NCBI RefSeq assembly: GCF_006345805.1
Contig: NC_043019.1
Location: 26,907,360-26,971,359 of the forward strand
DNA from: Octopus sinensis
Lineage: Eukaryota
Direction of reading: 5' to 3'
Length of the DNA: 64,000 bases
Part shown: one piece after another, positions 30,658 through 51,306 of the stretch
How the letters are laid out: each line of letters starts with the position of its first letter
Numbering within the stretch: the stretch's first letter is position 1
Made by a program: the position numbers and the translations under genes
The notes under the pieces: generated by a model
The model's database searches: none
What the model was told of the DNA's origin: nothing
Seen by the model: the letters and a program-made list of their open reading frames with translations, nothing else

Positions 30658-30690
<33 letters not shown>

Positions 30691-30699
30691 TCCTGATCA

Positions 30700-30995
30700 G
30701 GAATAGGAACTGGAGTGAAGGACATTGTCGCAGAATACCACCGCACAGAGATGTGATTGGCCTGTCACGTCGCAAGGTTCACAGACAGACGGTGAATCAA
30801 TCCGTGCAGTTGCCGAGTGGTACCAGCGCAAATGGAAGAAATCACTCGAAGATCTCCTATCAGTGAGGACGATGACTTAAGAAAGGTGTTTGGAACAAGA
30901 TGGAGGAGAAATGGTGAGAGACTGAACACAATGGAGCAAATGCTGTGGCCAGCAGATCTGACTTGGCACCGGACAGCCTGGCCGACCCAGGCAAT
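30700..30995 (+). mobile_element. RTE-like LINE 3' coding remnant
   Basis: ...DDDLRKVFGTRW... preceded by a degenerate W.GHV.R / RxxGR.. context. Confidence 0.45.
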
Positions 30996-31198
30996 GTATA
31001 TATACATACACATATATATATATATATATACATATATATACCGGAGTAAACACATAAATGTGAAACAAGGTGGAAAAAAGAGTACTCAAATACCAGTGGT
31101 AGAGTAATATACTTTATTTAAAGCAGCAGAAAATTGAACAAAACTTGTTACTCTGAGTTTCGCGTTCCCGTTTGTCGGACAGTTTTTGCTAGAAAAAA

Positions 31199-31236
31199 CT
31201 GTCTGACGAATGGGAACGTGAAACTCCGAGTAACAA
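31199..31236 (+). ncRNA. Minimal hammerhead ribozyme motif
   Basis: ctgt-CTGACGA-atgggaacgt-GAAAC-tccga-GTA-aca. Confidence 0.5.
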
Positions 31237-32523
31237 GTTTTGTTGAATTTTCTGCTGCTTTAAATAAAGTATATATATACATATATATATATCTATAATA
31301 TATATATATATATATATATAAATTTATAAATAAGGATAATATCGATATTAAATATCGATATTATCAAGTGGCCAGCATGGGAATAAATACCATACAAAGG
31401 TAATAATTTTTTACAACTATAAATAAGGGTGTCTGAGAGACACCACCATGCCGAAATAGCAGTCAAACCCTGACTTTAAAAACCACCTAAAAAGTTCATA
31501 TCGCACCATGAGATAAGACAGAGAGACAAAATATACTAGCAAAAAGATATTACTGGATAACTTTTTAGGTGGTTTTTAGAGTCAGGGTTTGACTGCTATT
31601 TCGGCATAGTGGTGCCTCTCAGATACATATATATATATATATAATATATATTATTGACTATATATATTATATATTATAGTTATATATGTATTATTGACTA
31701 TATATATATATATATATATACATATCTGTAAATTAATATGTTACCATTATTCAATAGCCAAGATAAAACTCTGAGTTTCGGATGCCGAAGTGGAAATCCA
31801 CAACACCATGGCCAGATAACCAAGGAGATGGTGTTGTGGATTTCCACCTCGGCATCCGAAACTCAGAGTTTTATCTTGGCTATTGAATAATGGTAACATA
31901 TTAATTTACAGATAAATTTCCTCTATTTACATAATATTGAGGTCGCTTTCTTTCTTTTGTTATCTTACCGTTTTTACCAATATATATATATATATATACA
32001 TATATATAAAAAGAGAGAGAGAGAGTGAGGAACGTGTGTAGTGTTTGTTTAATAATTTATTGTTCTTTTTACAGTCTATGGCGTTTCCATGGTGACAATT
32101 TGTTGACATTCTATTATTTCATTTTTTGACATTTTATAACATTCATAAAGACCCTATGAGCTTTACATTACATTCTACACCATTCTTTGAGGCGTTCTAT
32201 TACATTCTATGATATTCTGTGATATATCTTTCTATTACACCCTATGCTATTATATTACATTCTATGACAATCTATGGCGTTCTGTTATGTTCAATCATGC
32301 TTTTACTATGTTCTCTTTTACGCTTTTACTTGTTTCAGTCATTTGACTGCGGCCATGCTGGAGCACCGCCTTTAGTCGAGCAAATCGACCTCAGGACTTA
32401 TTCTTTGTAAGCCTAGTACTTATTCTATCGGTGTCTTTTGCCGAACTGCTAAGTTACGGGGACGTAAACACACCAGCATCAAGCGAGGATTGGGGGACAA
32501 ATACAGACACAGATACACACATG

Positions 32524-32557
<34 letters not shown>

Positions 32558-32875
32558 TATATATAATTATATATATATATATATGAGAACAAAGTGTACG
32601 TACGCCGTTTGCATTCTTGTCCCATTTTGTATTTTATATATATATATATATATAACGGGAAGGTTTACGAAAATAAACAAAAGACGAAGGCAGGTGGAGT
32701 ACAAACAAACAAATGTATTAGTATGGCGCTCAGGAATAGAAATAGAACAAGTCTTTTATGTTTCGAGCCTATGCTCTTCGACAGAAAGATACACAGAAAA
32801 GAAACAAGGAGAGAAAAATTGTGTGTAGGAGCTAATGGTCTATCATGGCGTTATATATATATATATATACACATA

Positions 32876-32906
<31 letters not shown>

Positions 32907-33723
32907 GATGGGCTTCTTTCAGTTTCCGTCTACCAAATCCACTCACAAGGCTTTGGTTGGCCCAAGGCTATAGTAGAAGACACTTGCCCAAGGTGCCATG
33001 CAGTGGGACTGAACCTAGAATCATGTGGTTGTTAAGCAAGCTACTTACCACACAGCCACTACAATGCCTCGTAATTAACTGTACAGAAAGGAGCAGCTCA
33101 GTTGGTAAGGGGCCAAAATCTTTGTTATTTCCAGTTGACATTGCAGGAAAGAAACGTGCTTCCTTTCAGTCCAACCGGAATGTGAAATTGCGATTCGTGC
33201 TCACACGCACACACAAAAGAGATATATTTTCATACTAGTAGGAATATAAGAAAGTTGATTAATGAGCTGAAAGTGCAGCTAACTCTTAAAATAAATGGTA
33301 GTTTTCTTTTTAAATACTTTTTTTAAAAGTTCATTTGAACTAAAACACCAGTTTGAAACCTGTCTTATAATTTAAGGAAAAAATTCAAAAATTTCAAAAA
33401 CTTCAAATAAAACTCAGCTTCATTTAGAGACCCAGGTGTCTTTCCAGCCCTTGAATCAATTCTCTTACATATATATATATATCACCGTGACCGACCAGGC
33501 TATCAGATGTCGCTACACATCGCTGGTCACAATGCGCTTCGCATTGTTTTAGCCTTCAAAAGACACCACCCCGCTGGCTAAGCATGCAGGCCAAGAGAAG
33601 AAAGAGTAAGAGAAAGTTGTGGTGAAAGAGTACAGCAGGGGTCGCCGCCACCCCTGCCGGAGCCTCGTGGAGCTTTAGGTGCTTTCGCTCAATAAACATT
33701 CACAACACCTGGTCTGGGAATTG

Positions 33724-33763
<40 letters not shown>

Positions 33764-33769
33764 AAATCA

Positions 33770-34210
33770 CAGTCAAATGGAAATTGTAGTTTCGGTCCCA
33801 GAGCTGGTGGCATGTAAAAAGCACCATCCAAATGTGGCTGATGCCAGCCCCCCTACCTTGATTGGCTTCTGTGCCAGTGGCACGTAGAAAGCACCGTCAG
33901 AATGTGGCTGATGCCAGCACCGCCTTGACTGGCTTCCCTGCTGGTGGCACGTAGAAAGCTCCATCCGATTGTGGTCGATGCCTGGCCCCTCTGCTGGTGG
34001 CACGTAAAAGCACCCACTACACTCCTGGAGTTGTTCGCATTAGGAAGGGCATCCAGCTGTAGAAACTCTGCCAAATCAGATTGGTGCAGCTGTAGAAACC
34101 TTGCCAAATCAGATTGGGGCCTGGTGCAGCCTCCTGGCTTTCCAGACCCCAGTCGAACCGTCTAACCCATGCAGCATGGAAAACGGACATTAAACAATGA
34201 TGATGATGAT
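33770..34210 (+). mobile_element. RTE-associated 3' UTR with short tandem units and (GAT)n tail
   Basis: Repeated gtggcacgta(g/a)aaagcacc units, same as 21000-21200. Confidence 0.65.
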
Positions 34211-34711
34211 ACAACAAGAAATAATATTTGTCTCTTTTTACAGAAACAAAAAGGGTTTATAGGACTGCAAAAGAAAGGCTCAAATATAGATGAGACGAAG
34301 ATAAGGAAGCATTGTTTATAGAACAAACATTAAATTTGGGTCAACGACTTTACATAGAACCACCACCCCTCAAACATTTAATGATATATAAAAATCACCA
34401 TGGTTCCCATACACATAAATCAATGTATATGTATTATATTAATGTGTTTGGGAACCATGGTGATTTTTATATATGATTAAATGTTGTTCTATGTGAAGTT
34501 GTTGACCCAAATTTAATGTTTGTTCTATAACAAATGCTTCCTTATATATATGTATATACTGGAGTAAACACATAAATGTGAAACAAGGTGGAAAAAAGAG
34601 TACTCAAATACCAGTGGTAGAGTAATATGCTTTATTTAAAGCAGCAGAAAATTCACAAAACCTGTTAATCTGAGTTTCCCGTTGCCGTTCATCGGACAGT
34701 TTTTGAAAAAA

Positions 34712-34748
34712 CTGTCCGATGAACGGCAACGGAAACTCAGAGTAACAG
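34712..34748 (+). ncRNA. Minimal hammerhead motif (CCGATGA core variant)
   Basis: ctgt-CCGATGA-acggcaacg-GAAAC-tcaga-GTA-acag; a reverse-complement copy lies in the opposite arm. Confidence 0.45.
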
Positions 34749-35734
34749 GTTTTGTTTAATTTTCCTGCTGTTTAAATAAAGTATATATATATAGATATAT
34801 ATATATATAGTATATATATATAATATAATGTGTGTGTGTGTGTGTGTCTCTATGTGTGTGTGTGTTTGAATGATCAAGTATAATACTGACAGGGTTGTTG
34901 TATGTCTTAGGGTACCTAAAGGTTGTGGTTTTAAATTTTCCCTCCATGAACCCTGTGTAGCAATTTGGTCTCTGTTCAGCCAGTGCCATAGTTTGCTGTT
35001 ACATGTGCCTCATAAACAAAGGAGGATATATTATGCTGTTGGGGACATTTAGATTTATCTTTGCATGTGTATCCATGGCTGTTTTTTTTTAATGCGACGT
35101 CACCGGTGCCGAGCTGTATCAGCCCCTTTGCCTTTCCCTTGGATAACATCAGTGGTGTGGAGAGGGGGAGGCTGGTATGTATGAGCGACTGCTGGTCTTC
35201 CATAAGCAATATTACCCAGACATGTGCCTTGGAAGGGAACTTTCTAGGTGTAATCCCCTTGGTCATTCATGACCGAAGGGGGTCTTTACCCTTTTGCCTT
35301 TTTGATAAGGGTACACCAGGCACATGCATCACAACCATATGTGCACGACATGGTGATCTCATATCAAGATAAACAGCACATGACCTTGCAGGTGGGGGCC
35401 CAGTTAGAATTTTCTTCAGTTTGAGTAACCCATCTCGCTCAAAAGGTCCCTGAATAAGGGTTGTTTAAGGATGTTGAACGAAACACCCATGTTTCCAGAG
35501 GTGAATTATTCAAACCCCAAAGAATCCCTCTCAACACATGGCTATGATGCTCCCCAACTACTTCGGCTCGTGATCAGAGATGCACATATCGTCAGCCACT
35601 AAGGGCCATTCTCAACTGGTTAAAAAAAAGAACACACACGCGCACACAGAGACGCAGTAAAGGAACAGTAGATTGGGGGCATTAGCTTTGCTCTCAGGTA
35701 AAATGGAAGAAGTATTCTACGTGAGGAAAGAGGG

Positions 35735-36147
35735 ATATTTTCGGTTTGAACGGCAGTTTTTCCTAGCGGTGTCATATGAAATTGTCACCCATAATTATGA
35801 CCCTAGTATCAATCAATTGCATTTCAATTTGTTTTAGGGTTAGGGCTAGGGGTGGGGGAAAAGGGTATATTTTTTTCTTCAGAAATGTAAATAAACCCAA
35901 TCTGTTTCTTAAACGAGGGACATATTCATACGGCACAGAATGTTTTCACCTCAATAGACGTCATTGATTGGTTGAAATTGCAGAAACTGAAGAAAAAAAA
36001 CAACAAATATCTTACAAACTATAGAATTTTCTCAATAAAGCCAAGAGAAAAATATGTTTTATAAACACATTCTACCAGTATACGAAGTAGAAAATTTTTT
36101 AGTTACGGGGAAATTATTTTTAAAAACTGCCGCTCAAACCGAAAAGT
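35735..36147. mobile_element. MITE-like element
   Basis: Terminal inverted repeats ttttcggtttgaacggcagttt / aaactgccgctcaaaccgaaaa. Confidence 0.5.
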
Positions 36148-36469
36148 AACTGCTTTCCATATATAACAGTTATTATTATTTTTATGATTAAAGGCCAGTT
36201 ATTTCAGACTTACGATTTGTAGGTTAAATCAATTGTAGTACTCGACTAGTACTGCTAAGATGACCTGGCTGTGATTTGAACTCAGAATGTAAAAACTTGA
36301 ACAAATACCATAAGGTATTTACTTTTTCTTACTCTCTTCCAAAAATATATAAAAATGTTCAGATCGTTTTAAAATACGTTTCTGGGTTTTAAAAGAGTGG
36401 TCTCCCCTGGCACTGAGTTATCTCCCTTGTCCTTGTTTTAGTATTCTTCTCTGTTCTAGGCATAAGGAC

Positions 36470-37235
36470 CGAAATTTTTGAGAAGGCGTCCAGTCGATTA
36501 GATCGACCTCACTTCGCTACTGGTACTTAATTATCGATCCTGAAAGGATGAAAGGCAAAGTCGACATCGGCGGAATTTGAACTCAGAACGTAAAGACAGA
36601 CGAAATACTGCTAAGCATTTCGCCCGGCGTGCTAACGTTTCTTATTTCTTTATTGCCCACAAGGGGCTAAACACAGAGAGGACAAACAAGGACAGACAAA
36701 CGGATTAAGTCGATTATATTGACTCTCGTGCGTAACTGGTACTTATTTAATCGACCCCGAAAGGATGAAAGACAAAGTCGACCTCGGCGGAATTTGAACT
36801 CAGAACGCAACGGCAGAGGAAATACCTATTTCTTTACTACCCACAAGGGGCTAAACACAGAGAGGACAAACAGGGACAGACAAACAGATTAAGTCGATTA
36901 TATCGACTCCAGTGTGTAACTGGTACTCATTCAATCGATCCCGAAAGGATGAAAGGCAAAGTCAACCTCGGCGGAATTTGAACTCAGAACGTAACGGCAG
37001 ACGAAATACCGCTAAACATTTCGCCCAGCGTGCTAATGTTTCTTATTTCTTTATAATCCACAAAAGCAATAAATTCCATCGACCCCAGTGCGTAACTGGT
37101 ACTTAATTTATCGACCACGAAAGGATGAAAGGCAAAGTCGATCTCGGCGGAATTTGAACTCAGAACGTAACGGCAGACGAAATACCACTCAGCATTTCGC
37201 CCAGCGTGCTAACGTTTCTGCCAACTCGCCGCCTT
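36470..37235 (-). mobile_element. Head-to-tail cluster of ~4 SINE B copies
   Basis: aaggatgaaag(g/a)caaagtc(g/a)a..tcggcggaatttgaactcagaacg repeated at ~36545, 36765, 36945, 37125. Confidence 0.8.
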
Positions 37236-37551
37236 TATTTGTTTATATATTGAAGTTCTAATTTCAAATTCTGCTGGAGTTACCTTCGCATTCCATTCTT
37301 TCAGTAACGTCCAACTCAATACCAGTCATGTTCTGAGGTCCATGCAATAGACTCTCGTTCCCCTCTGATTAAAATTATTATTATTATTTTATTATATAAT
37401 TGTGTGTTATTGTTTTATGTATATATGAGTCGGGGTTAACCACAGTAAATAAGGTACTCAATACATAGCAGAGTAAATTAATTTATTATATAGAAGGAGC
37501 TTCTACAGGACTAGAACTGTTTCATTCAAAAGAAATCATCAGGAAGCATCA

Positions 37552-37604
37552 GAGCTTCCTGATGATTTCTTTTGAATGAAACAGTTCTAGTCCTGTAGAA
37601 GCTC
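37552..37604 (+). ncRNA. Type I hammerhead ribozyme motif
   Basis: gagcttc-CTGATGA-t ttc tttt gaa t-GAA-ACAG ttctagtc CTGT-A-gaagctc: 7-bp stem I, 4-bp stem III, GUA triplet. Confidence 0.65.
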
Positions 37605-37614
37605 CTTCTATATA

Positions 37615-37741
<127 letters not shown>

Positions 37742-38629
37742 GTGTGTGTGTGTGTGTGGTGTGTGTGTGTTCTTTTATTCTTTCTCTTGTTTCAGTCATT
37801 TGACTGCGGCCACGCTGGAGCACCGCCTTTAGTCGAACAAATCGACCCCAGGACTTATTCTTTGTAAGCCTACTACTTATTCTATCGGTCTATTTTGCCG
37901 AACCGCTATATTACAGAGACGTAAACACACCAGCATCGGTTGTCAAGCGATGGTTGGAGGACAAACACAGACATACAAATACATACAAAGATATATACGA
38001 CGGGCTTCTTTCATTCCGCCTACACAATCCACTCCCAAGGATTTGGTCGGCCCGAGGCTATAGCAGAAGACACTTGCCCAAGGTGCCATACAGTGGGACT
38101 GAACCCAGGACCATGTGGTTGGTAAGCAAGCTACTTACCACACAGCCACTTCTGCACCCATACGTTCTTTTTCCTCTTTTTAAGTTTAGAATAAACTTTG
38201 AACAACCACCTATTTGGTAGCGAAGCTGCGAAGGAAAATATCTTGTTTGAACCATCACCCTTTAAAGCCTTGCAGATTTTTATAGTTCCAGATATCGTGA
38301 TCATTTGTAGCATTAAGGATCTGCGTTCTCTCCCCAAGATCCCAAGTTTAGCCATACTTTGCTCCAGAGGGGGTTGGTGTGTATCCTGTTGCTCCAGGAT
38401 ACATACAAATCCTGTATGAAGGTGTATCTTGGGTATTGGACTTGCAAACTCATTAGCAATGGTCCATTATGTATGTATGTATGTATGTATTATGTATGTA
38501 TGTATGTATGTATGTACGTCATTAAGATTGCTAGCCAATAGCGAAAGAGCCGGTTTCTAACCTAGATCCAAGACTCCATTAGAATATCAAAAACATCAAC
38601 AGGGTATGTTGTATGTATGTATGTATGTA

Positions 38630-38661
<32 letters not shown>

Positions 38662-39719
38662 GTGTGTATGTATGTATGTATGTGGGCAGATTTGTTTGTG
38701 CTATTTTATGTATGTCTCTTCATGCATATTATTGCATATCTAGACATGCTCATATATACTTTAATGATAAACAGATTTTTACAGTTCCACTGATGGATTG
38801 GATCTGTAGTCTTCGAATCAGCTTTCTCCTATCTGGTTTTGCGGAGTCTAGTTTCTCAAGATTGGTGTGTGTGTGTGTGTGTGTGTACATATAAATGGGT
38901 GCAAGCATTGAAATCATTGTATATATAAATCTTATTACATGGTAAACTTCGTTAATGTTTTATATGTTTTGACAATTCATATCTGTAATTTTCTCATTAC
39001 CGTATTTCCCGGCCTGTATTTTCAATGTAGCGTATAGTGCAAAAATTTTCCCAAACCCTGCAGCATTTCACATGGAAGTTTTGGCCCTCTATGTCTTGGT
39101 GTATAAGTCAACCTACCTTGTTTAGCTGTAAATTTTGCTTTGAAAAATTCGATTTGTTTTCCAGAAAATACGGTAGGCGTTTTCTTTCTGGTATTGTGAA
39201 TCCCAACTTCTTACGCTTCATACTAATGTCGTTAATCACGTAATTAAATGTCCCACTAATTAATGGTAGAAATCTAAGTTCATATTCAGGATGGAGTAAT
39301 CTTCATGTTTTGTGTTTGCAATAATCGAGGCTGAATTTAATAAACTTGGTAAACAGCTGAACAATATTCTGATTTCATCAGCAGTGTAGGGAGCTTTACT
39401 GTAGACTGACTGTTAATAATATATAATTCTTTTTTCTTTATACTATTGGCACAAAGACTGAAATTTTGGATGTAGGGGCTTTCCGATTACATCGACCCCA
39501 GTGCTCGTCCGGTATTATTTTATCGATCACAAAAAAAAAAAATGGAAGTCACAATCGATCCTGGCGGAATTTGAACTCAGAACGTGCAGTCGAAAAGAAA
39601 TGCCACCAAACACTTTGTCCTGCATACTAGCGATTCTACCTGCTCGCCACCTTCCCCAGGAAAATAATAACCTTTTTCCATTATAGTTACAGGCCTGAGA
39701 TTTCGCGGGAGGGAGCTAG

Positions 39720-40590
39720 TCAATTTTATCTCCTGTATTCTAACACTTTCTCTAAATGCCAGAACTCTCCCCTCTTATAAATCTCAGTCACAGACTTCCA
39801 ACAGATGTCATTTCATCTCTCCAAAGTCCTGCCGTCCTTCATCCCGAATATCTCAGTTCTCTACTGTTTGCAGCACAAAACCTTTTCAGATTTGTACCAA
39901 TTATATTAACAACGCTAATTTTTTGAGATTGTATCGATGGACTCCCTTTGTTTAGAAAAGTAGAAAGGTTTCATAGTCTTTCAATACAGGTCACCAGTTG
40001 TCGAATGTTATTATTAACACAGAGACAGGCATAAAGAAAGCTTTTGAAAGGAATCAATGAAGAATATCTCTTAACATTACAGGAATTAAAAAGTTTATGA
40101 TAATTAAGGTCAGGAAGCTCCTGGCTATATTAACAACACCGTCTAGGTTAAAGGGAGGATTATACCAGATTGCTTTTCTTTTGAATATTCTCTTGGGGTT
40201 TGAGGACGCAGGTTGGGAGGGTTCTTATCACTAAAGCCACTTCCAGCTCGAGCCTTGTTATATTGCAGATAGGTTGAAGATACTTCTATGATATCTGAGA
40301 CTAGGTTTCTGATTACAGCTGGAGGGCGGTTGGAATGTTTATGAACGTAAAATTTCTAGGGGCAGTACTTGTTTGTCTCGAGATCTAGAGTTACATCTAA
40401 GAAGTTAATCTATGTTAAGTTGGCGGTGACCGTTAGATAAGCCAAATTCATTTAGGATGTTAATAAAGATCCTAAATTTATCTATGGCGTGACCGGTCAT
40501 ATGGCTTGAGATGGCCAGGCTATCGTCCTTGTGTTGGGTCGAACAGTGGGGGGTGCATTCATGGAGTCTAGAATAACATCTAGGTAGCTG
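39720..40590 (-). mobile_element. Penelope-like element RT C-terminal remnant
   Basis: Minus frames give DDSLAISS...NFLDVTLDL...HSN.PP...IWYNPPFNL; disrupted. Confidence 0.7.
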
Positions 40591-40605
40591 ACCTATATAA
40601 TATAT

Positions 40606-40660
<55 letters not shown>

Positions 40661-40916
40661 TGTGTGTGTATATATATATAATATATAATATATATATATA
40701 CTCTTTCACTTGTTTCAGTCATTTGACTGCAGCCATGCTGGAGCACCGCCTTTTTAGTCGAGGAAATCGACCCCAGGACTTATTCTTTGTAAGCCTAGTA
40801 CTTTTTCTATTGATCTCTTTTGCCGAACCGCTAAGTTACGGGGACGCAAACACACCAGCATCGGTTGTCAAGCGATGTTGTGTGTGTGTGTGTGTGGGGC
40901 ACACACAGACACACAA

Positions 40917-40955
<39 letters not shown>

Positions 40956-41118
40956 CGTATATACGACGGGCTTCTTTCAGTTTCCGTCTACCAAATCCAC
41001 TCACAAGGCTTTGGTCGGCCCGAGGCTATAGTAGAAGACATTTGCCCAAGGTGACACGCAGTGGGAATGAACCCGGAACCATGTGGTTGGTAAGCAAGCT
41101 ACTTACCACACAGCCACT

Positions 41119-41163
<45 letters not shown>

Positions 41164-41250
41164 GTGTGTGTGTGTGTTTACATACATATGTACATACATA
41201 CATACATATAGTATGTGTAAGCATATATGTGCTTATCTATGTATGTGTGT

Positions 41251-41291
<41 letters not shown>

Positions 41292-41581
41292 TACATACAT
41301 AGATATTCACATATATGCTTCCATATACGTACACAAACGCACCCATAATACATACATAAATACATACATACATAGAGTCCCCACTACACACACATGCATG
41401 CACTTATATATGTATTTACGCGCATACACGTAAATATTAACAGGGATGAAAACAGACGTTAAAAACAGACACACAGACAGACAGAGAGGCAAGCGTTAAT
41501 GATTTTTTTGTGTTTTTTTTTTGCCACATAAATCGAAAGGTAAAAGTAAAACAACGATTTCAGAATCTTGTTGAAACTAAT

Positions 41582-42044
41582 TTAAAGCAGATTGCAACCT
41601 TTTTGTGAATTTTCTGAAGAATTATCTGATTCATCATTGATATTTTGTGATAAGCCCGAAGACGTAGCTGGTATGTGCATAGTCTTTTGTGATTTGCGCA
41701 AAGGATGTCCCAATTTGTGTTCGATCCAATGTTTTCGGCGATTGTCACAGCAATGCGTCGTTCTCTCTTTGACTTTTAATTCCTTCATCCAAGAATCATC
41801 GTACACCGTGCCTTCATTCACAAGACAAAACAACATGGTGCGTTTGTTCTTTATTTCTTCAGCCAAATGAGTGAAAAGTGCTTCTTGGTCGCCGATTTTA
41901 ATGACGTAGGGCAAAAGAGAATCGATCTTGTAGAAAGCGCGGCGAATTAAGGTAATGGCAAGCCAGTGGCCTCCTCTTCCACCCCTGCTGCAGGTGTGAA
42001 TTACGAAACCTTTGATCTCCCTCATAGCCAAGCTTCTAATGTCT
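41582..42044 (-). CDS. Terminal exon of a second, divergent Josephin-domain paralogue (upstream exons not found in window)
   Basis: Phase-2 acceptor accatcag|A at the position homologous to exon 3 of the + gene. Encodes DIRSLAMREIKGFVIH...GGHWLAITLIRRAFYKIDS...IGDQEALFTHL...LFCLV...DDSW, then a tail ending SENSQKGCNLL*. Catalytic His and Asp are retained and the frame is open for 154 codons. Confidence 0.85.
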
Positions 42045-42171
42045 CTGATGGTAGTGGCGGTCACGGTAGGAAGTAAGAAGAAGAAGAATAAAAAAAAAAC
42101 AACAAAGTATACAAGTCACACTTGAGGTTTCAATCTTACAATAAGAAGTGTTTGGGGATTCGGGCCAAGAA

Positions 42172-42205
<34 letters not shown>

Positions 42206-42416
42206 ACGACCACACACAACAGACACACATACAGACACCACACACACAGACACACACCAGACACACCCACACGACACACACCAACATACACACACACACA
42301 CAGACCACATAACACAGATACAACACACAGATACACACAGACAACACACAGACACACACAGACACACACACACACAGACCACACACTCATACAAGCATAC
42401 ACATACACATACATTT

Positions 42417-42466
<50 letters not shown>

Positions 42467-42495
42467 CATGTATACATACATACATATATACATGC

Positions 42496-42553
<58 letters not shown>

Positions 42554-42801
42554 CGGTATATATATACATACATGCATATATATATATACACATATACATA
42601 TACACATACATAGTAATTAACATACATATATACACATGCATACATGCGTACATTTATTCGAATCTATCTATCTATCTATCTATCTATCTATATATGTGTA
42701 TGTATATATTGTATATATATGTGTATATATATATATGTTTGTATATATATGTATGTATATATAGTATGTATATATACGTATGTATAGATATATGTATATA
42801 T

Positions 42802-42853
<52 letters not shown>

Positions 42854-44539
42854 ATATATATATATGTATATACACATTAGCATATAGTAGTCGGTGATTT
42901 CAAACAACTGACGCCTTTTCCCACACCTCTCTGACTTGTCCGAAACCTATTCATTGAAGTGAGACAGACGGACTGAGTAGAAACGCAAGACAGATGGAGT
43001 GCATGTTTTGTTTTTTTTTTGGTTTTTTCTTTGATGAGGGACGGTAGCCCTTTTTTTCTGTTTCCCAGTTTAACACCCCGCCCATCTTGCCTTTGGGTAC
43101 CTTTTTCAGAACGCACTCTGTTGCAAGCATTCCAAATAAACCGGTAACCCGAGGGACCTCAAGTCTCATGCAATTTGACGCGTTGGTGTGTTGCTCTCCT
43201 TCTCATGTAGCAACTCACGTGATGTAGTTTCTTCTTCCCTTCAAAACCATCGAGGTTGCTGCTGTCTTTGATTGAACATTCAAAGACAGACGTCTGTTTG
43301 GTGAATTAGATCGGTGATGTGCCACGAGAAGATGCTAGGTGTGCCGCAGTGTTCCCCTAGTTATGTATTTATTTCACGTCTGCCGCTGAAGTTTGAAAAG
43401 AATACAAGTGTACCGCGACTGAAGAAAGGTTGTGGAGCATTGAATTAGATAAAAAAACAAAAACTAAATCTCTTTAAGACACTGTAAATGAATTTACTAA
43501 AACCGACAATAATTATTAATCACCAAGATTTTCATTTAAAAATATTTTTTATAAATTTATTTTATTTATCTCAGCATTTGCAGACACCACAAAATATAGC
43601 ACGTGCATTAAGCGGTGGACATATTTTTTCTCAAAGCATTGAATGTCAAGTTAGTTTGGTTGTAGTTAATATAAAAAATGATAAATAAACATAAAAAATA
43701 AATGACAAAAAAAACAAAACCCAAAAAACAACCTGGAATAATTTTGCAGCCAGGAGAAAATCAATATTAGTCAACGTTATTTGTATTTGTTGAACACTTA
43801 TCAGAGAAAACTGCCGGCGTGTTTCAGTTTTATTCTGATCTCATCAACGAAGTAGTCATCACTATGTTTGTCAAAGTAGAGATGAATCACCCAATAAATG
43901 TAGGAAATTGTAAAAGAGAACGATTAAACAAAAGGGCAAAAATAAGCAGAAAAAAATAACAAAAAACAAACAAAAACAATAGTGACAAAGTTAATGAATG
44001 TCGCTGAGAAGAGTACGAGAAATCGACGTTTCGGATACTTTTCTTTTGTCAGGTATACCGGTTGAAAAAAGACAAAATAATGTAAGAAGATTATAAAAAA
44101 TGCGTGTTATGATTCTCTATGTACGTACATACATACATACATACATACATACATACATGCAAATACATGCTCATATGATACATATATACATATGCATGCA
44201 TATATTATAGCATATATATATATATATACAATATATATATAGCATACATACATAGTATATATGCTATATATACGCATATATAGTATAGTATATGCATATC
44301 TAGTATATATAATATATATCTATATATACAACATGTATGCAATAATCGATATATATTATAATTTCATATCATGACATACATACATACATACATATATATA
44401 TAATATCTCACAGGGTATATATATGTAATATCAGTATATATATATATAATAATATATATATGATAATATATATATATATATATATATAATATATATAATA
44501 TATATTATATATTTGATATTTCTATATGATATATATATG

Positions 44540-44612
<73 letters not shown>

Positions 44613-44640
44613 GTATATATAGTATATATATGCATATATG

Positions 44641-45175
44641 CAGTTGGCCATAAAGTCACGCACCATCTGAAAATATGTGAAATTGCTAACATTCTCTGTT
44701 TTTTTTGTCTCTTTTCACAAGTGCCGATATTACTCCCAAACCAATCCTCATTGGATGGCGGCACATAATGAAAAAGGAGGGGGTCAAGGTAATGGTGTGG
44801 TGTGGGATTTGGCACGATCAAGTAATTGGACCATTTTATTTTCAGGGCTCTCTGACAGGTGATTCGTATCTGGACAAACTTGGCAACAAAATGATGCGTC
44901 ACGTGCATTTACTTGGAACGGGAAATCCTTCGATTCACTTTGCGGGGGGAAATCCTGAAGGACGGGGATCTGCCCCATTATACATTACAGGTTTGGGATT
45001 TTCTGAATGAACATTTTCCAGAGAGATGGCTCGGGTTCATCGGAATTTCAAATTCCGCATGAACACTTGTTTTAAGCTACATGGCCAACACTTTGAACAT
45101 TTTTTATGGATTACCATTCTTGTTTAGTAAAGCTACTTGATATCTCCCATGGTACGTGACTTTGTGGCCACCTTG
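44641..45175 (+). mobile_element. Internally deleted IS630-Tc1-mariner transposon
   Basis: TIRs cagttggccataaagtcacgcaccat / atggtacgtgactttgtggccaccttg; remnants KVMVWCGIW..VIGPFYF and DGDLPHY...FLNEHFPERW. Confidence 0.75.
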
Positions 45176-45249
45176 TGTGTATATATATATATATATATAT
45201 TATAATATATATATATATATTATATATATATAATGTATATAATGTATAT

Positions 45250-45692
45250 ATATGAAAAAACAAGTCAAATAGAAAATGTTAAAATAATTTTATAAAGAAC
45301 ATTTCAGTACCGGTTTCGGTCATTTTGAGACCTTTTCAACGTAACGATTAAATAATTAAATTTAGAAAAATTAGAAGAAAAGTTTTTTTAAAGGAATATT
45401 TGTATAGTGTTCAAATGTAAGTGGCATTCTGCCTTTTCTCTTCTCCCTTGTTTGCACTTGTGTGTTCGAGGTGTTGCACACAGTGCAAAAAGGGAGACAG
45501 AGAAAGGCAGAATGCCACTTACATTTGAACACTATACAAATATTCCTTTAAAAAAATTTTCTTCTAATTTTTCTAAATTTAATTATTTAATCGTTACAGT
45601 TGAAAAGGTCTCAAAATGACCGAAACCGGTACTGAAATGTTCTTTATAAAATTATTTTAGCATTTTCTATTTTGACTTGTTTTTTCATATAT
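45250..45692. repeat. Inverted repeat, ~190-bp arms
   Basis: 45250-45440 is the reverse complement of ~45500-45692; flanked by (TA)n. Confidence 0.85.
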
Positions 45693-46635
45693 ATCAACTC
45701 GTGTGTTCCTTTTCACCCTTATACATATGTATATATATATATATATACATGTATGTATATGTATATATATATATGTATGTATATGTATATATATGTATAT
45801 ATATATGTATATGTATGTATATGTATGTATATGTATATATATGGTATACTTATACAATTATTTGTATATATATCTATGTATATATATATGTATATATAAA
45901 TCTATCTCTCTCCTCTCCTCTCTCTATATCTCTATATATATAATATATAATATATATATATATTCGTACATACGTATATACATTCGTTCATTCACACACA
46001 CACTCGCGCAAACAAACACACACACACATACACACACACATACTCACATATATACGCTCCAACTTCTTTGAAACCCTATTTCTTTGCAAGACAAGCATTC
46101 ACTCTCCGGCCATTATATGAATGAATAGACACTATCACTTTTTGAAAGATTTATTTCTAGAAACAAAATTATGTCAATGGATGCATTTAAATTCTTAATC
46201 ATGACAAAGTTGTCCCAGGAGGAATTTGAACTCCAGATATAATATGTGATTGCAAATGCTGTTCCAGATATTCCCTTTCTCGATCAAGTGTGACCTTGTA
46301 TCTGCGCCTGTATGCGCAGGCTTGTGCAAGGATGAGTTATATAAGATCGTCAGTGGCTCGAGCGTACGGTTTTCCTATTCCTGGTTGGTCATCAACGATG
46401 TTGTCTAATGGAAGGGTGACGTTAATAAAGTGTAGCATCAATGTCATCGCAAGAGATGTGCTCAGAATGCGCAGAGTTAGAACGGGTAACGGTAAGGCAT
46501 CACATTCCACCGATAGTTCGGTGCTTTATTTTATCTTTTTATTCAACTCCAAACGGATGATTGCTAAAGTTCACCTAAGTAAAATTTATACACACACATA
46601 CACACGCAATATACATACATACATACATACATACA

Positions 46636-46669
<34 letters not shown>

Positions 46670-46973
46670 ATAACAATTTAATAAATAAAACATATGCATA
46701 CATATATACATATATGTACATACATACATCTATATGTATATAATACATGCATATATGAGTACAGGACCCACACATAAACGTAGAACACAACGAGAAACGA
46801 AACTACAAACCAAACAAGGAAACGGACTTTTTTTAACAACGAAAAAACAGAGTACAAGACAAACAATACAAGGAATATTCCCCTTCATCAGCTGCCCCTG
46901 TTTCGACTCAATGCGCGTTTCGAAGGTAAGGGCACCTTCGAAACACACACACACACACACACACCACACACAC

Positions 46974-47004
<31 letters not shown>

Positions 47005-47429
47005 GATACATACATTCATATATCATCGTTAGTCTTAACCCACGGCAACTGGGGGGAGAGTCACTGATGAGGAATCATCAAATTTGAAATCATAGACGAT
47101 ATGGCTCAGTCACGCTTGCGGTAGGAAGGTTGTCTCCCTTGTTAGTCATAAATAAAGTGCTTCCCGTAGCTGAGAGTTGTTCTGAAGACTTATTTCTAAC
47201 AATGTTGGTGCTGACTAGACCTTAGTGACGTCTACACACATGCAAACGCACAGATATGGTTACAATGGAGCAGGCCCTTTGGGGAATGGCTGACGGTTTG
47301 GTCTGAATCTTTGCAACAGAGTGAACTCGTTCCGTTAAAGGTACCGAATGGCTTGTCCGTTGAGCTAACTGGTTGGCACATTAGGGCTACCATTCAAGTT
47401 TCTATGTGCACATGTACTTAAATAAGGAT

Positions 47430-47650
47430 ACAAGGAGGTGCAGAAAAGTTCTTGGCTTTGGGTGAAAAAAAAGACAGGAAGATCAGTCAATTATGATTTT
47501 ATGCAATAGATTCCCCTCTCAGGTTCACTCACTTAATGCAGCGGTCCTCCAGTTTTTCTAAGCTCTGTAAAAGAACTTGGATGGTTGTTCCTCCAACCAG
47601 ACCTTTCGCACTACTCTTAAAGCCAGGAACCTTTTAGCACAGCCTCGGGC
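47430..47650 (-). mobile_element. Mariner 3' end remnant
   Basis: TIR-like caaggaggtgcagaaaagttcttggcttt plus minus-strand WLEEQPSKFF.. C-terminal transposase motif. Confidence 0.6.
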
Positions 47651-47696
47651 ATGTATGTATGTATGTATGCATGCACATCCCTTCCCTCTCTGTATA

Positions 47697-47796
47697 NNNN
47701 NNNNNNNNNNNNNNNNNNNNNNNNNNNNNNNNNNNNNNNNNNNNNNNNNNNNNNNNNNNNNNNNNNNNNNNNNNNNNNNNNNNNNNNNNNNNNNNN
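47697..47796. other. Assembly gap (100 N)
   Basis: Run of exactly 100 N; true size unknown. Confidence 1.
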
Positions 47797-48016
47797 TTGC
47801 AGGCGTGGAAGGTGTTTATAAGCCATTTAAGAACGCAACAAAGTTTAAATGTTCAAGTGAATCTAACGGTTTTTGTGTGTTTGTTAAATGGCTTATAAAC
47901 ACCTTCCACACTGCAATTGTTTTCGTTCCAGCACACGATCTCGAGATCAATCTTCACTCGCTATGGCAAGTACATCTCCGTAGTTATATACACACACACA
48001 CACACACAATATATAT

Positions 48017-48047
<31 letters not shown>

Positions 48048-48294
48048 CTATATATATATATATTATATAATATATATATATATATATATATATTTATACA
48101 CATATATATATATATATGTGTGTGTGTATATCTATATCTATATCTCTCTATCTCTCTCTATATATATATATAATATAAAGAAAATATTTTAGTGGGGGAA
48201 ACACACGCGGGATTTGAGCTCAGAACCTCAGAGACGGAAAAAATGCTTACCACCGTTTTGTCTGTCATGCAAACGGTTTTGGCATCTTATCATC

Positions 48295-48360
<66 letters not shown>

Positions 48361-49458
48361 GTAATAATAATAATCCTTTCTACATAAGGCACAAGGCCTG
48401 AAATCTGTGGGGAAGTGGACTATTCTGTTACATCGACCTCTGTGTCCTCCCCACCCCAAAATTTCAGGCCTTGTTCCTATAGTAGAAAGGATTAATTATA
48501 TCGGGAGGTCTTGTGAGTGGATTTGGTAGGTGGAAATTGATACAATTTGGTAGGTGGAATTGACCAGGTATATGTATGTGTGTGTGTGTGTGTGTATGTG
48601 TGTGTGTGTGTTTGTGTGTGTGTTCATGTGTGTGTTCATGTGTGTGTCCATGTGTTGTACACAACTGCTTGACAACCGGTGTTGGTTTGTTTTCGTTGCC
48701 GTAACTTAGCTGTTCGGCAAAGACACCGTCATGATAAAGTACCACGCTTTAGAAAACTAAATACAGGGATCGAGGTGGTGCCCCAGTATGGCCGCAGTTC
48801 AATGACTAAAACATGTCAAAAATAAAAAATAAAAGTATAAAAGAACAAAAAAAACAGGCAAAAATTATTTGGATGGGGTTGTATAATCGATATTATCTCG
48901 ACACCAATATATGACTGGTACTGACGTTACGGATACCTGAAGGTTCAACAGCAATTTATAGCTAGGGTCCTGTCGAACAGTCAGGGCGAAGAACTTTAAT
49001 GAAAGCAGGTTGCTTCCGAGGGGATGACTGTTTTAGAGACTGTGACATCGAGGCTATTTTACCAAAATCACAGCCCCTCCTCTCGGGGCAAAAGTATATG
49101 CGTGTCTGTGTATGAGTGTGAGTATGTGCGTATACATATATACATACATACATACATACATACATACATACATACATACATACATACATACATACATACA
49201 TACATACATACATACATACGTCCGCTTTCTTCCGGTCATTTCATCATGTTCAACCGTTAAACTCCACACAGTTTTTCTCTTCCTTTTTTTACTCTTCTGA
49301 TTCCTTTCTGTTGAAGAGCATAGGCTCGAAACATCAAAAGCTTTCCCTTTCTTCCCGAGCGTCAAACCAATAGCCCTGCTTGTTGTTCCCTCATCTGTCT
49401 TTGTCTTTTGTTCCCTGTACATTTGAACTGTACATACATACATACATACATACATACA

Positions 49459-49492
<34 letters not shown>

Positions 49493-50560
49493 AATATTAT
49501 AATGGAATAGTTTCTATGAAGCATTGTGTAGAGTGTAGGTAAGGCCAGAACAATGCGAAGTAAATGCCAGGCAGATCGCAAGAAAACAAATACATTAATT
49601 AATGTAGAAATACCTTGCATTTAATATTTCGGGGTTATGACAACCGGTGTTGGTTTGTGACACATATTCGGATACTCCACACACACGCACATCTGCAACA
49701 TTCGTTAATTTCTTGAAGATAGGGTCATAACGTCAAATTATTGAATGCAAGGTAAGTCTACATTAATTCATATATTTGTTTTCTTGTGATTTACCTGGCC
49801 TTTACTTCGCATCGTTCTGTTCTTACTCTCAACCCAAGATAACAAAAGAATGAAAGTGACCTCGATATTATGTAAATAGAGGAATTTATCTGTAATCGCT
49901 GTTGAAACAAATACGTATATTAAAAATATAAAAATGGCATAAATATTTTTAAAAAATGATATAGACGTATTTCCAACATGAGAGATCGAGTCAGATCGAT
50001 GATCTGATAGTTATCGACTGAGAAATAAGCTTTAAAATAATTCGACATCTGGTGTTTATTAAGGTAGTCGAATACGAGTGGGAATGGTAAGTCTGGATAA
50101 ATGGTAAATATGGCACTTGTCCATTGTTTACATCTTATCATGTATATAAATAAATATACAACAATACCTTGTCTATCGCTGGTGTTACGTTCCAAAAAAA
50201 AAAAATACCCCGCGATAGGTGAAAATCCGCGATATAGAAACAGTACTGTATATTTTTTATTATTATCTTTATATATTTAAGCTTTTATAAACTCTCTCCG
50301 CATTCTTAGGGATACCCGTGTCTTCTGTATTTTTTTTTTCGGGTGAGGAACAAAGCGATGGGCAGCTACTGGCGCTATCTTTTCTTCGGTGTAAGGAAGA
50401 AAGGCTTAGAAGGGCGACATCGTAGGGCTTGGTATAAATTCACAATTGTACACACAAATACAAAACAACATCATGCACTCGTCTTCCGAGTCGTTTTCCA
50501 TACAGTATATGCGATTCTTTGTTTACCAATCTACAGTACACTACGTATTTTCTGTTAATA

Positions 50561-51306
50561 TTGGGCCGTCCGGAAAGTTCGTGCCGATTTTTAAAAGAAA
50601 GAAAAAGGTCAATAAATACTTGCCATTAATTTTTTTTTTTCTTAGTGGATCGTGTCGTTCGCGAGAAGAGACTCAATAGATCGCAGTGTGGTAGCTGCTC
50701 TACTAAGCACGTCACTCCGAACGGCAAGTCGGGTCGTATGCAAGCGATCCCTTTCCTCTCGATCTCTTCGAACTTGTCGGGGTGGGACGAGCAGACGATG
50801 ACGGCGCGGACGCCGCCGCCGCCGCCGCGTCCCCAAATGGCAATTCCGCCGTCTCCATTTTTCCTTTAACTTGAAAATACCCACTTCCCTGAATTGAGGT
50901 GGTTTCATGGCAAAGAATTCATCAAGGTATCTTTTTACGTCATCCAAGGAATTGAAAATTTTTACCATTAAGCCTATTCTACAGAGACCTGAATAAGTGG
51001 AAATCCGAAGGAGCAATATCTGGTGAATATGGAGGGTGGGGTAACACATCCCAGCCGAGCTGCAGCAATTTTTGTCTGGTTCCCAAAGCTTCAAGTGCCG
51101 AAAATGAACTTTCTTATCTTCCATTTGAAAGGGTTACAAAATTAACACGGGTTATAGGAACATAAACCTTCTTGCACGAAAAGATAGCTTAAACTGTGCT
51201 CTAAATGGAGGTATAGTCAAATCCTATTTTATGGACTCAACCATATTCTAAAATATGTCGAAAGGTAAGCTGCTATAAATCGGCACGAACTTTCCGGACA
51301 ACCCAA
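50561..51306 (-). mobile_element. Deleted mariner element with 30-bp TIRs, TA duplication and a GC-rich insert
   Basis: TIRs ttggg(cc/tt)gtccggaaagttcgtgccgattt (28/30 identical), TA on both sides; MEDKKVHFRHL N-terminus and FNSLDDVKRYLDEFF..KP..F..GIFKL..KW C-terminus. Confidence 0.85.

What the first reader, a model, noticed from the sequence alone, without database searches (positions are those of the whole stretch)
41582..42044. Second, highly diverged Josephin paralogue facing the first tail-to-tail
Seen: an uninterrupted 154-codon exon on - with the same phase-2 intron position, catalytic His (GHW) and Asp (IDS). Identity to exon 3 of the + gene is roughly 30% by eye, and the loop before the His is ~5 aa shorter and Gly-rich (CSRGGRGGHW vs PCGNIIMKLISQGKHW). 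The tail has a CC pair (THCCD), a possible palmitoylation site. Nucleotide similarity even runs past the stop (ttaaactagttccaac vs ttaaattagtttcaac). I found no exon with the catalytic Cys or NYD motif between 42045 and 64000. Inference: an old inverted duplication kept under selection, possibly with altered ubiquitin-chain or substrate specificity. Its 5' exons lie beyond the window or in the gap at 47697, or it is spliced to unrelated exons.
Basis: partly seen in the sequence, partly recalled or inferred. Interest (0 to 1): 0.7.

Follow-up and report, generated by a model that had tools for sequence, protein, structure and literature searches.

The report
Last exon of second octopus Josephin
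This is the real final exon of a second, fast-evolving copy of a Josephin ubiquitin-removing enzyme gene in an octopus genome; its first two exons are hidden by an assembly gap, and the gene is already annotated in a related octopus, so it is a fairly ordinary finding.

Summary
Window 42044..41582 (- strand) is an open 153-codon terminal exon with a conserved acceptor. It shares its phase-2 intron position with exon 3 of the + strand Josephin gene (23681-24092). BLASTP between the two exons gives 27% identity, E 1e-19. A profile comparison assigns the exon to the Josephin family (97.6%, E 3e-12).

It is not an orphan. In Octopus bimaculoides the orthologue is a complete three-exon gene (XP_014776700.1, "josephin-1 isoform X1", 239 aa). 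That protein keeps the catalytic Gln, Cys, His and Asp and lies tail-to-tail with the other paralogue. O. vulgaris has an intact exon 2 about 8.6 kb upstream of exon 3.

The window stays collinear with O. vulgaris exactly up to the 100-N gap at 47697-47796. The missing 5' exons therefore lie at that gap.

The exon is under purifying selection, though weaker than in its neighbour:
- dN/dS is 0.39-0.46, against 0.08 for the neighbour.
- The window lineage has 0 substitutions where 7.3 are expected (P = 0.0006).

This copy has lost several family-invariant residues, including the Trp that human JOSD1 needs for ubiquitin-esterase activity. It also has a shorter loop before the catalytic His. Altered specificity is plausible but untested. 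Verdict: a new member of a known kind, of modest interest.

The parts
41582..42044 (-). Terminal (third) coding exon of the second Josephin paralogue ('B'), stop codon included. It encodes the C-terminal half of the Josephin domain (catalytic His in GGHW, Asp in KIDS) and a ~60-aa tail ending in CNLL.
   Evidence: It is 97% identical to O. vulgaris CAI9739518.1 and 83% identical to O. bimaculoides XP_014776701.1.
42045..42110 (-). 3' splice site of intron 2 of paralogue B. It has a polypyrimidine tract, a CTTAC branch-point-like motif and CAG at 42047-42045.
   Evidence: nearly identical in the window, O. vulgaris and O. bimaculoides over the ~60 nt before the exon.
42045..47696 (-). The part of intron 2 of paralogue B that is present in the window. 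It is rich in microsatellites.
   Evidence: collinear with O. bimaculoides intron 2 (L001 11988-14988) and with O. vulgaris L002 4395-9979.
47697..47796 (.). 100-N assembly gap. Exons 1 and 2 of paralogue B are expected here.
   Evidence: The alignment to O. vulgaris stops at window 47696 = L002 4395. L002 1-4394, which holds an intact exon 2 at 1219-1332, has no counterpart after the gap.
41542..41633 (-). Island of ~90 nt conserved at nucleotide level, covering the last 17 codons, the stop and the first ~40 nt of the 3'UTR. It is shared with the + paralogue (24041-24132).
13630..13752 (+). Paralogue A, exon 1 segment with the catalytic Cys ([10 protein letters not shown]).
15507..15635 (+). 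Paralogue A, exon 2 (GNYD, LWF).
23681..24092 (+). Paralogue A, exon 3 (KHW, LDS, tail ending in CNLI, stop). This is the partner of the inverted duplication.
   Evidence: Exon 3 is identical to P0075 (O. vulgaris CAI9739517.1 = O. sinensis XP_029649915.1).

Best explanation
The feature is exon 3, the last coding exon, of a second Josephin-domain deubiquitinase gene (paralogue B). B lies convergent (tail-to-tail) to the canonical josephin-1-like gene (paralogue A), 17.5 kb away.

Origin. B arose by an old inverted tandem duplication in the lineage leading to Octopus. It has evolved about six times faster in protein sequence than A but remains under purifying selection.

Gene structure. In this assembly, exons 1 and 2 fall in the 100-N gap at 47697-47796. 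Exon 1 carries the oxyanion Gln and catalytic Cys; exon 2 carries the NYE motif. The gene is therefore most likely intact in the animal.

Inferred mechanism. The product is a papain-like Cys/His/Asp ubiquitin hydrolase with a Josephin fold. Its substrate-side pocket is remodelled:
- the Trp equivalent to JOSD1 W100 is Gln;
- the NPH motif is deleted;
- NYD has become NYE;
- ILN has become VIH;
- the loop before the His is 8 aa shorter.
These changes would alter its preference for ubiquitin ester or isopeptide bonds, or for particular substrates.

Tail. The protein has a disordered, conserved C-terminal tail ending in the CaaX-like CNLL, which may be prenylated for membrane targeting.

Shown: exon anatomy, homology, synteny, selection, and the fold of the orthologue. 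Inferred: expression in this species, catalytic activity, changed specificity and prenylation.
For: - Homology: BLASTP to A exon 3 gives E 1e-19. hhalign of the exon alone against a 16-sequence Josephin alignment gives 97.6% probability, E 3.4e-12.
- Full-length orthologue: O. bimaculoides XP_014776700.1 (P0003, 239 aa) scores 74.6 bits on Pfam Josephin, above the cut-off of 26. It keeps Q13, C18, H108 and D123.
- Fold: the AlphaFold model has pLDDT ~95 over the domain. Its best PDB match is human JOSD2, 6PGV_A, with target-normalised TM 0.87 and E 8.6e-13.
- Gene order in O. bimaculoides: B exons lie at L001 10001-10132, 11194-11307 and 14989-15465 (+). A exons lie at 26398-26276, 24312-24184 and 23602-23189 (-).
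- O. vulgaris: exon 2 is intact with cag|G and AA|gtaagt splice sites at L002 1219-1332.
- Synteny: the window is collinear with O. vulgaris up to the gap edge and with O. bimaculoides intron 2.
- Selection between species: dN/dS is 0.39 and 0.46 for B and 0.083 for A. The binomial test against neutrality gives P = 0.0075.
- Selection in the window lineage: 0 substitutions in 434 exon sites against 7.3 expected from the flanks, P = 0.0006.
- Splice site: the acceptor region is conserved in three species.
- JOSD1 W100: this residue is needed for full esterase activity (PMC7848729). B has Gln at that column, where the other 22 aligned Josephins have Trp.
Against: - No transcript or spliced-read evidence could be consulted for any species.
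- Exons 1 and 2 of this species were not seen. Their presence is inferred from two relatives.
- Exon 1 was verified only in O. bimaculoides. In O. vulgaris its expected position falls about 260 bp outside the fetched locus.
- The O. vulgaris annotation models only a 147-aa product that starts at an internal Met.
- The exon alone scores below Pfam's gathering cut-off (19.5 against 26 bits). That is expected for one third of a domain.
- dN/dS of ~0.4 and the loss of six otherwise conserved residues are also compatible with a partly degenerate or non-catalytic protein.
- All four O. vulgaris-specific changes are nonsynonymous.
Confidence: 0.8

Rival explanations
1. Orphan pseudo-exon. In this species the 5' exons have been lost, and the exon is a not-yet-decayed relic of the duplicate.
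For: No exon-1-like or exon-2-like sequence exists anywhere in the window. Sequence after the gap is not syntenic with the 10 kb upstream of the gene in O. bimaculoides or with L002 1-4394. No protein model for this gene from the window species is in the protein collection.
Against: The exon has had 0 substitutions in this lineage against 7.3 expected from the flanks (P = 0.0006). The frame and the acceptor are intact. The break in synteny coincides to the base with an N run, which points to an assembly artefact rather than a deletion. The closest relative keeps an intact exon 2.
Confidence: 0.07
2. The exon is expressed, but as part of a catalytically dead product that acts as a ubiquitin binder or regulator rather than an enzyme. 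The product could start at the internal Met (MREIKGF, as modelled in O. vulgaris), use a non-Josephin 5' exon, or be a full-length pseudo-deubiquitinase.
For: The O. vulgaris model CAI9739518.1 is 147 aa and lacks the Cys-bearing exon. O. bimaculoides isoform X2 (P0002) replaces exon 1 with a short alternative N-terminus and lacks the catalytic Cys. B has lost the W100-equivalent Trp, the NPH motif, and the D of NYD. dN/dS is raised.
Against: All four catalytic residues (Gln, Cys, His, Asp) are retained in full-length isoform X1. A dead enzyme usually loses them. The model keeps the Josephin fold with high confidence. The 147-aa model is most simply an annotation that missed the unannotated but intact exon 2.
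Confidence: 0.1
3. The resemblance is a chance or low-complexity match in an AT-rich, microsatellite-rich genome.
For: The surrounding sequence is full of (TG)n and (TATG)n runs that give many spurious ORFs. Pfam on the exon alone is below the cut-off.
Against: BLASTP E 1e-19; hhalign 97.6%; orthologues in two other species, one with a complete domain; the same intron phase and position as paralogue A.
Confidence: 0.01

Closest known systems
Octopus bimaculoides 'josephin-1 isoform X1' (XP_014776700.1, UniProt A0A0L8GZE9) and O. vulgaris 'josephin-1-like isoform X2' (CAI9739518.1)
   Same: They are orthologues of this exon, at 83% and 97% amino-acid identity. O. bimaculoides shows the same tail-to-tail arrangement with the other paralogue. 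They share the tail and the CNLL end.
   Different: The window holds only exon 3, because the 5' exons fall in the assembly gap. O. bimaculoides has a 4-aa insertion (HILT) in the tail. O. vulgaris carries four derived nonsynonymous changes, including THCCD to THFCD.
Paralogue A in the same window (josephin-1-like; P0075 = O. sinensis XP_029649915.1 / O. vulgaris CAI9739517.1)
   Same: It has the same three-exon structure and phase-2 intron 2. It has the same catalytic motifs, a shared acidic Ser-rich tail ending in GCNL[IL], and the shared ~90-nt island across the stop codon.
   Different: Exon 3 is 27% identical. A keeps every family-invariant residue and the full-length loop before the His. 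A evolves slowly (dN/dS 0.083, against 0.39-0.46 for B). B has a ~25-aa longer basic tail segment (RKHWIEHKLGHPLRKSQKTMHIP).
Human JOSD1 / JOSD2 (MJD family, MEROPS C86; structure 6PGV)
   Same: It has the Josephin fold (TM 0.87 to 6PGV_A) and a catalytic Gln/Cys/His/Asp arrangement. It is a small protein that is little more than the domain. JOSD1 is reported to be preferentially located at the plasma membrane (PMC10050893, citing Seki et al. 2013).
   Different: The W100 equivalent is Gln. W100 is needed for full JOSD1 esterase activity (PMC7848729). The NPH motif is missing, the pre-His loop is 8 aa shorter, and the C-terminal tail is longer with a CaaX-like end that human JOSD1/2 lack (my recollection of the human sequences, consistent).
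UCH-L1, a deubiquitinase with a C-terminal CaaX (CKAA)
   Same: It is a small cysteine deubiquitinase whose C-terminus carries a CaaX-type motif proposed to be lipidated (PMC5806207).
   Different: It belongs to an unrelated family (UCH), and the role of its farnesylation is disputed (PMC4276877). It is a functional analogy only and nothing here tests it.

Membership tests
Josephin / MJD deubiquitinases (Pfam PF02099, MEROPS C86) | Significant match to the Josephin profile | tested here: met
   The exon alone scores 19.5 bits, E 9.6e-4, below the gathering score of 26; it covers only profile positions 98-150 of 157. hhalign of the exon against a Josephin family alignment gives 97.6%, E 3.4e-12. 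The full-length orthologue P0003 scores 74.6 bits.
Josephin / MJD deubiquitinases (Pfam PF02099, MEROPS C86) | Catalytic His and Asp/Asn in the C-terminal half (HW ... DS) | tested here: met
   GGHW and KIDS in the window exon align to the invariant H/W and D/S columns.
Josephin / MJD deubiquitinases (Pfam PF02099, MEROPS C86) | Catalytic Cys and oxyanion Gln in the N-terminal helix (Q-x4-C) | tested here: inconclusive
   They are absent from the window, where the exon 1 region is hidden by the gap. They are present in the O. bimaculoides orthologue ([15 protein letters not shown]).
Josephin / MJD deubiquitinases (Pfam PF02099, MEROPS C86) | Josephin fold | tested here: met
   AlphaFold2 model of orthologue P0003: domain pLDDT ~95. 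Best Foldseek PDB hit is 6PGV_A (human Josephin-2), target-normalised TM 0.87, followed by ataxin-3 and ATXN3L Josephin domains.
Josephin / MJD deubiquitinases (Pfam PF02099, MEROPS C86) | Other family-invariant residues (NPH, NYD, INV, the W of WF/WW, ILN) | tested here: not met
   In B the NPH motif is deleted, NYD is NYE, INV is ISV, W is Q and ILN is VIH. Only the ILN-to-VIH change lies in the window exon. These residues are not catalytic, so this marks divergence rather than exclusion from the family.
Josephin / MJD deubiquitinases (Pfam PF02099, MEROPS C86) | Ubiquitin isopeptidase or esterase activity | not testable with these tools
   This needs recombinant protein and Ub-substrate assays.
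CaaX-box prenylated proteins | Cys at position -4, an aliphatic residue at -2, and a C-terminal residue that directs the prenyltransferase (L for GGTase-I) | tested here: met
   B ends in CNLL in all three species and A ends in CNLI. The motif rule is taken from general knowledge. No predictor was run.
CaaX-box prenylated proteins | Actual lipid modification and membrane association | not testable with these tools
   This needs metabolic labelling or localisation of Cys-to-Ser mutants.

The most novel reading that the evidence does not exclude
Paralogue B may be a neofunctionalised, membrane-anchored Josephin enzyme specific to octopuses or cephalopods. On this reading it is prenylated at CNLL, and its remodelled active-site rim (the W100-equivalent changed to Gln, a shortened pre-His loop) switches it away from the ubiquitin-esterase activity typical of JOSD1 towards a different bond or substrate.

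In addition, the ~90-nt island kept at nucleotide level across both stop codons is an inverted repeat. In read-through convergent transcripts it could pair into dsRNA and couple the regulation, or the A-to-I editing, of the two paralogues. The O. bimaculoides isoform X3 model spans both genes, so such transcripts may exist.
Probability: 0.1. Interest if true: 0.6.

Novelty: new member of a known kind. Interest (0 to 1): 0.3.

Why it matters
Josephin-only deubiquitinases (JOSD1/2) are the least understood members of the MJD family, and they were recently shown to be ubiquitin esterases. This natural paralogue pair offers a comparison within one genome. One copy is conservative. The other keeps the catalytic residues but has replaced the Trp implicated in esterase selectivity and has shortened the loop next to the catalytic His. 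That makes it a ready-made system for asking which residues set bond and substrate specificity.

For genome annotation, the practical point is that the gene is split by a scaffold gap here and under-annotated in O. vulgaris. The 147-aa model there misses an intact exon 2.

Beyond that, this is an ordinary lineage-specific gene duplicate.

Tried and rejected
- tblastn of human JOSD1/2, of paralogue A exons 1-2 and of the O. bimaculoides B protein against the window, with E up to 100. No upstream B exon was found in 42045-64000.
- Search for B orthologues outside Octopus. The word-indexed searches and the exhaustive profile search of 1.84 billion representatives found only the Octopus B cluster, then paralogue A and generic Josephins. 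The duplication could not be dated against squid, cuttlefish or Nautilus, because the libraries seem to hold few cephalopod proteins.
- The top non-Josephin hit, P0006 (Tegillarca granosa, 5 repeats of GHWQ...SLLPSIVKIG), is a repeated segment of a transposon-like protein. I judged it a chance or repeat-inflated match.
- RNA structure in the conserved 3' island. RNAalifold gave -5.9 kcal/mol with essentially no covariation, so this is uninformative.
- Recent gene conversion as the cause of the 3' island. I rejected it because paralogue-specific differences are fixed in both O. bimaculoides and the window. An ancient conversion tract is not excluded.
- Rfam and tRNA scans of the whole window found nothing.
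- The alternative 3' exon of O. bimaculoides isoform X3 has no counterpart in the window or in O. vulgaris.
- A literature search for Josephin in octopus found nothing relevant.
- Palmitoylation at THCCD was downgraded because O. vulgaris has THFCD.
- O. vulgaris exon 1 could not be reached. By projection from O. bimaculoides it lies about 260 bp beyond the start of the fetched locus.

Full report
**What is there**

The window is AT-rich (36.6% GC) and microsatellite-rich. It is clearly eukaryotic and has one 100-N gap at 47697-47796.

On the - strand an open frame runs from 42115 to a TAA at 41584-41582. A long polypyrimidine tract and a CAG at 42047-42045 precede it. The exon is therefore 42044..41582. 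It consists of the last base of a split codon, 153 sense codons and the stop. Its translation contains GGHW and KIDS and ends in ...SQKGCNLL.

The + strand carries a canonical three-exon Josephin gene, paralogue A:
- exon 1 at about 13630-13752, with [10 protein letters not shown];
- exon 2 at about 15507-15635, with GNYD;
- exon 3 at 23681-24092.

The two third exons align at 27% identity with E 1e-19. They start at the same aligned codon in the same phase.

**Family assignment**

Pfam on the exon alone gives Josephin at 19.5 bits, below the gathering score of 26. The exon covers only the last third of the profile.

A profile-profile comparison used the exon from three species against 16 diverse Josephins. 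It gave 97.6% probability and E 3.4e-12 over the first 90 residues, with an 8-residue deletion just before the catalytic His.

**It is part of a complete gene in relatives**

A protein search found two orthologues:
- O. vulgaris CAI9739518.1: 147 aa, 97% identity, modelled from an internal Met;
- O. bimaculoides XP_014776701.1: 205 aa, 83% identity.

The cluster of the second also holds XP_014776700.1 (P0003, "josephin-1 isoform X1", 239 aa). P0003 has a full Josephin domain at 74.6 bits on Pfam. It retains the oxyanion Gln, the catalytic Cys ([15 protein letters not shown]), the His and the Asp.

In the O. bimaculoides chromosome the two genes are tail-to-tail, 7.7 kb apart:
- B exons at L001 10001-10132, 11194-11307 and 14989-15465;
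- A exons on the opposite strand at 26398-26276, 24312-24184 and 23602-23189.

The AlphaFold2 model of P0003 is confident over the domain (pLDDT about 95). The 70-aa tail is disordered. The best PDB match is human Josephin-2, 6PGV_A, with target-normalised TM 0.87, followed by ataxin-3 Josephin domains.

**Where the 5' exons of this copy are**

tblastn finds no exon-1-like or exon-2-like sequence on the - strand between 42045 and 64000.

DNA alignment shows that window 42045-47531 is collinear with O. bimaculoides intron 2. It also shows that window 38468-47696 is collinear with O. vulgaris L002 4395-13427. The O. vulgaris alignment ends at 47696, the last base before the N run.

O. vulgaris continues for at least 4.4 kb further. 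That stretch contains an intact exon 2 at L002 1219-1332, encoding LKQRGFLNSFHIGNYEISVLQIAVKSKGCQLIQFDKRK, with cag|G and AA|gtaagt splice sites. This exon is not in the O. vulgaris annotation.

Nothing after the gap in the window matches that stretch except dispersed repeats. The simplest reading is that exons 1 and 2 are in unassembled sequence at the gap.

The species is probably O. sinensis, which is an inference from two points. Exon 3 of the window's A gene is identical to the protein shared by O. vulgaris and O. sinensis. Clean non-coding bins are 96-98% identical to O. vulgaris.

**Selection**

Nei-Gojobori estimates on exon 3:

| Comparison | dS | dN | dN/dS | Differences |
|---|---|---|---|---|
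| B, window vs O. bimaculoides | 0.19 | 0.075 | 0.39 | 16 syn, 26 nonsyn |
| B, O. vulgaris vs O. bimaculoides | 0.19 | 0.087 | 0.46 | 16 syn, 30 nonsyn |
| A, window vs O. bimaculoides | 0.15 | 0.012 | 0.083 | 11 syn, 4 nonsyn |

For B, the binomial test against neutrality gives P = 0.0075 for the window comparison and P = 0.019 for the O. vulgaris comparison. B is therefore constrained, but several-fold less than A.

I then placed substitutions on lineages by parsimony in a three-species alignment. The window lineage has 0 changes in 434 well-aligned exon sites. The flanking non-coding rate predicts 7.3 (P = 0.0006). The O. vulgaris lineage has 4 changes, all nonsynonymous. The 60 nt upstream of the acceptor are almost invariant across the three species. 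The exon is not decaying in this genome.

**Age and origin**

dS between A and B is saturated (1.1-1.6) and dN is 0.70. The duplication is therefore several-fold older than the split between O. bimaculoides and the O. vulgaris group.

A neighbour-joining tree groups B with A at 77% bootstrap. Both are long branches, so attraction between them is possible.

Stronger evidence that A and B are sister paralogues is a shared derived tail, E-[ST]-[ED]-[DN]-S-S-...-Q-x-G-C-N-L-[IL]. Mytilus and the insect, mite, ciliate and plant Josephins that I fetched lack it.

No B-type protein outside Octopus was found, even by an exhaustive profile search. The libraries contain few cephalopods, so the duplication cannot be placed relative to decapodiforms.

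**How B differs, and the likely mechanism**

Twenty-two other Josephins were aligned with B. Against them, B keeps the catalytic tetrad but differs at several conserved positions:
- it lacks the NPH motif;
- it has NYE for NYD and ISV for INV;
- it has Gln where the others have the Trp of the WF/WW pair;
- it has VIH for ILN;
- its loop before the His is shortened and Gly/Arg-rich.

The Trp corresponds to JOSD1 W100. The W100F mutation lowers ubiquitin-threonine esterase activity about sevenfold, and C36 and H139 are essential (PMC7848729).

My inference is that B is still a Cys/His/Asp ubiquitin hydrolase but has a changed preference for bond type or substrate. A non-catalytic, ubiquitin-binding role is the main alternative.

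Both paralogues end in a CaaX-like box, CNLI in A and CNLL in B. CNLL is invariant in B across three species. Prenylation is a reasonable hypothesis for membrane targeting. Human JOSD1 is reported to be preferentially located at the plasma membrane (PMC10050893, citing Seki et al. 2013). UCH-L1 is a disputed precedent for a lipidated deubiquitinase. None of this is tested here.

**An unexplained detail**

The similarity past the stop codon is part of a ~90-nt island:
- The last 17 codons are 78% identical at nucleotide level.
- In those codons, 8 of 9 identical residues use the same codon. In the rest of the exon the figure is 11 of 30 (Fisher P = 0.008).
- The first 40 nt of the 3'UTR match at 30 of 40 positions. 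After that, similarity falls to background.

Paralogue-specific differences within the island are fixed in O. bimaculoides too. This is therefore old constraint, or an ancient conversion tract, and not recent gene conversion. RNAalifold gives no support for a conserved structure.

Because the genes are convergent, the two islands form an inverted repeat. The O. bimaculoides isoform X3 model reads from B exons 1-2 into an exon inside intron 1 of A, so read-through transcripts containing both islands may exist. That exon is not conserved in the window.

**Verdict**

The feature is the terminal exon of a real, selected, divergent Josephin paralogue. The paralogue is already annotated in O. bimaculoides, under-annotated in O. 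vulgaris, and broken by a scaffold gap here. It is a new member of a known kind and of modest interest. What interest it has lies mainly in the natural experiment on Josephin specificity and in the possible CaaX tail.

Noticed in passing
window 24041-24132 (+) and 41542-41633 (-): An island of ~90 nt across the stop codons of both Josephin paralogues is conserved at nucleotide level. Coding sequence is 78% identical, 8 of 9 identical residues use the same codon, and the first 40 nt of the 3'UTR match at 30/40. The rest of the exons is at saturation. The two islands form an inverted repeat 17.5 kb apart.
   Followed up: partly
window 24078-24089 (+) and 41585-41596 (-): Both paralogues end in a CaaX-like box (CNLI and CNLL). 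The motif is invariant in B across three Octopus species and absent from the Mytilus and arthropod Josephins fetched. It is a possible prenylation signal.
   Followed up: partly
L002 1219-1332 (O. vulgaris OX597836.1): An intact exon 2 of the second Josephin paralogue, with good splice sites, is not part of the O. vulgaris gene model CAI9739518.1. That model starts at an internal Met of exon 3.
   Followed up: yes
L001 25345-25503 (O. bimaculoides CM046623.1): The isoform X3 model of paralogue B (P0004) skips exon 3 and ends in an exon inside intron 1 of paralogue A on the opposite strand. This implies ~10 kb of convergent, overlapping transcription. The exon has no counterpart in the window or in the O. 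vulgaris locus.
   Followed up: partly
window 47697-47796 and 47797-64000: Sequence after the 100-N gap shares only dispersed repeats with the regions upstream of the gene in O. bimaculoides (10 kb) and O. vulgaris (4.4 kb). The gap may hide much more than 100 bases, or the scaffold join may be wrong.
   Followed up: partly
window 40699-41122, 5457-5862, 53005-53399, 37770-38153, 25809-26210, 4729-5121 and others: A dispersed ~400-bp SINE-like repeat occurs in many copies on both strands. It is also present in the O. vulgaris and O. bimaculoides loci. One copy sits about 460 bp downstream of the exon's stop codon.
   Followed up: no
window 6931-7719 (+): This open frame matches the Pfam zf-RVT domain (30.1 bits). 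It is a fragment of a non-LTR retrotransposon upstream of paralogue A.
   Followed up: partly
window 24093-41581: The intergenic spacer between the two convergent genes is 17.5 kb here but 7.7 kb in O. bimaculoides. The introns of paralogue A also differ in size: intron 2 is about 8 kb here and 0.6 kb in O. bimaculoides. Repeat insertions are the likely cause.
   Followed up: no
P0006 (Tegillarca granosa KAJ8305077.1): A repeated segment of a transposon-like bivalve protein (GHWQTIQQFKDHETFRTIVSLLPSIVKIG) resembles the His-to-Asp segment of paralogue B (GHWLAITLIRRAFYKIDSLLPYVIKIG). It outscored true Josephins in the profile search. This is probably chance inflated by five repeats.
   Followed up: no
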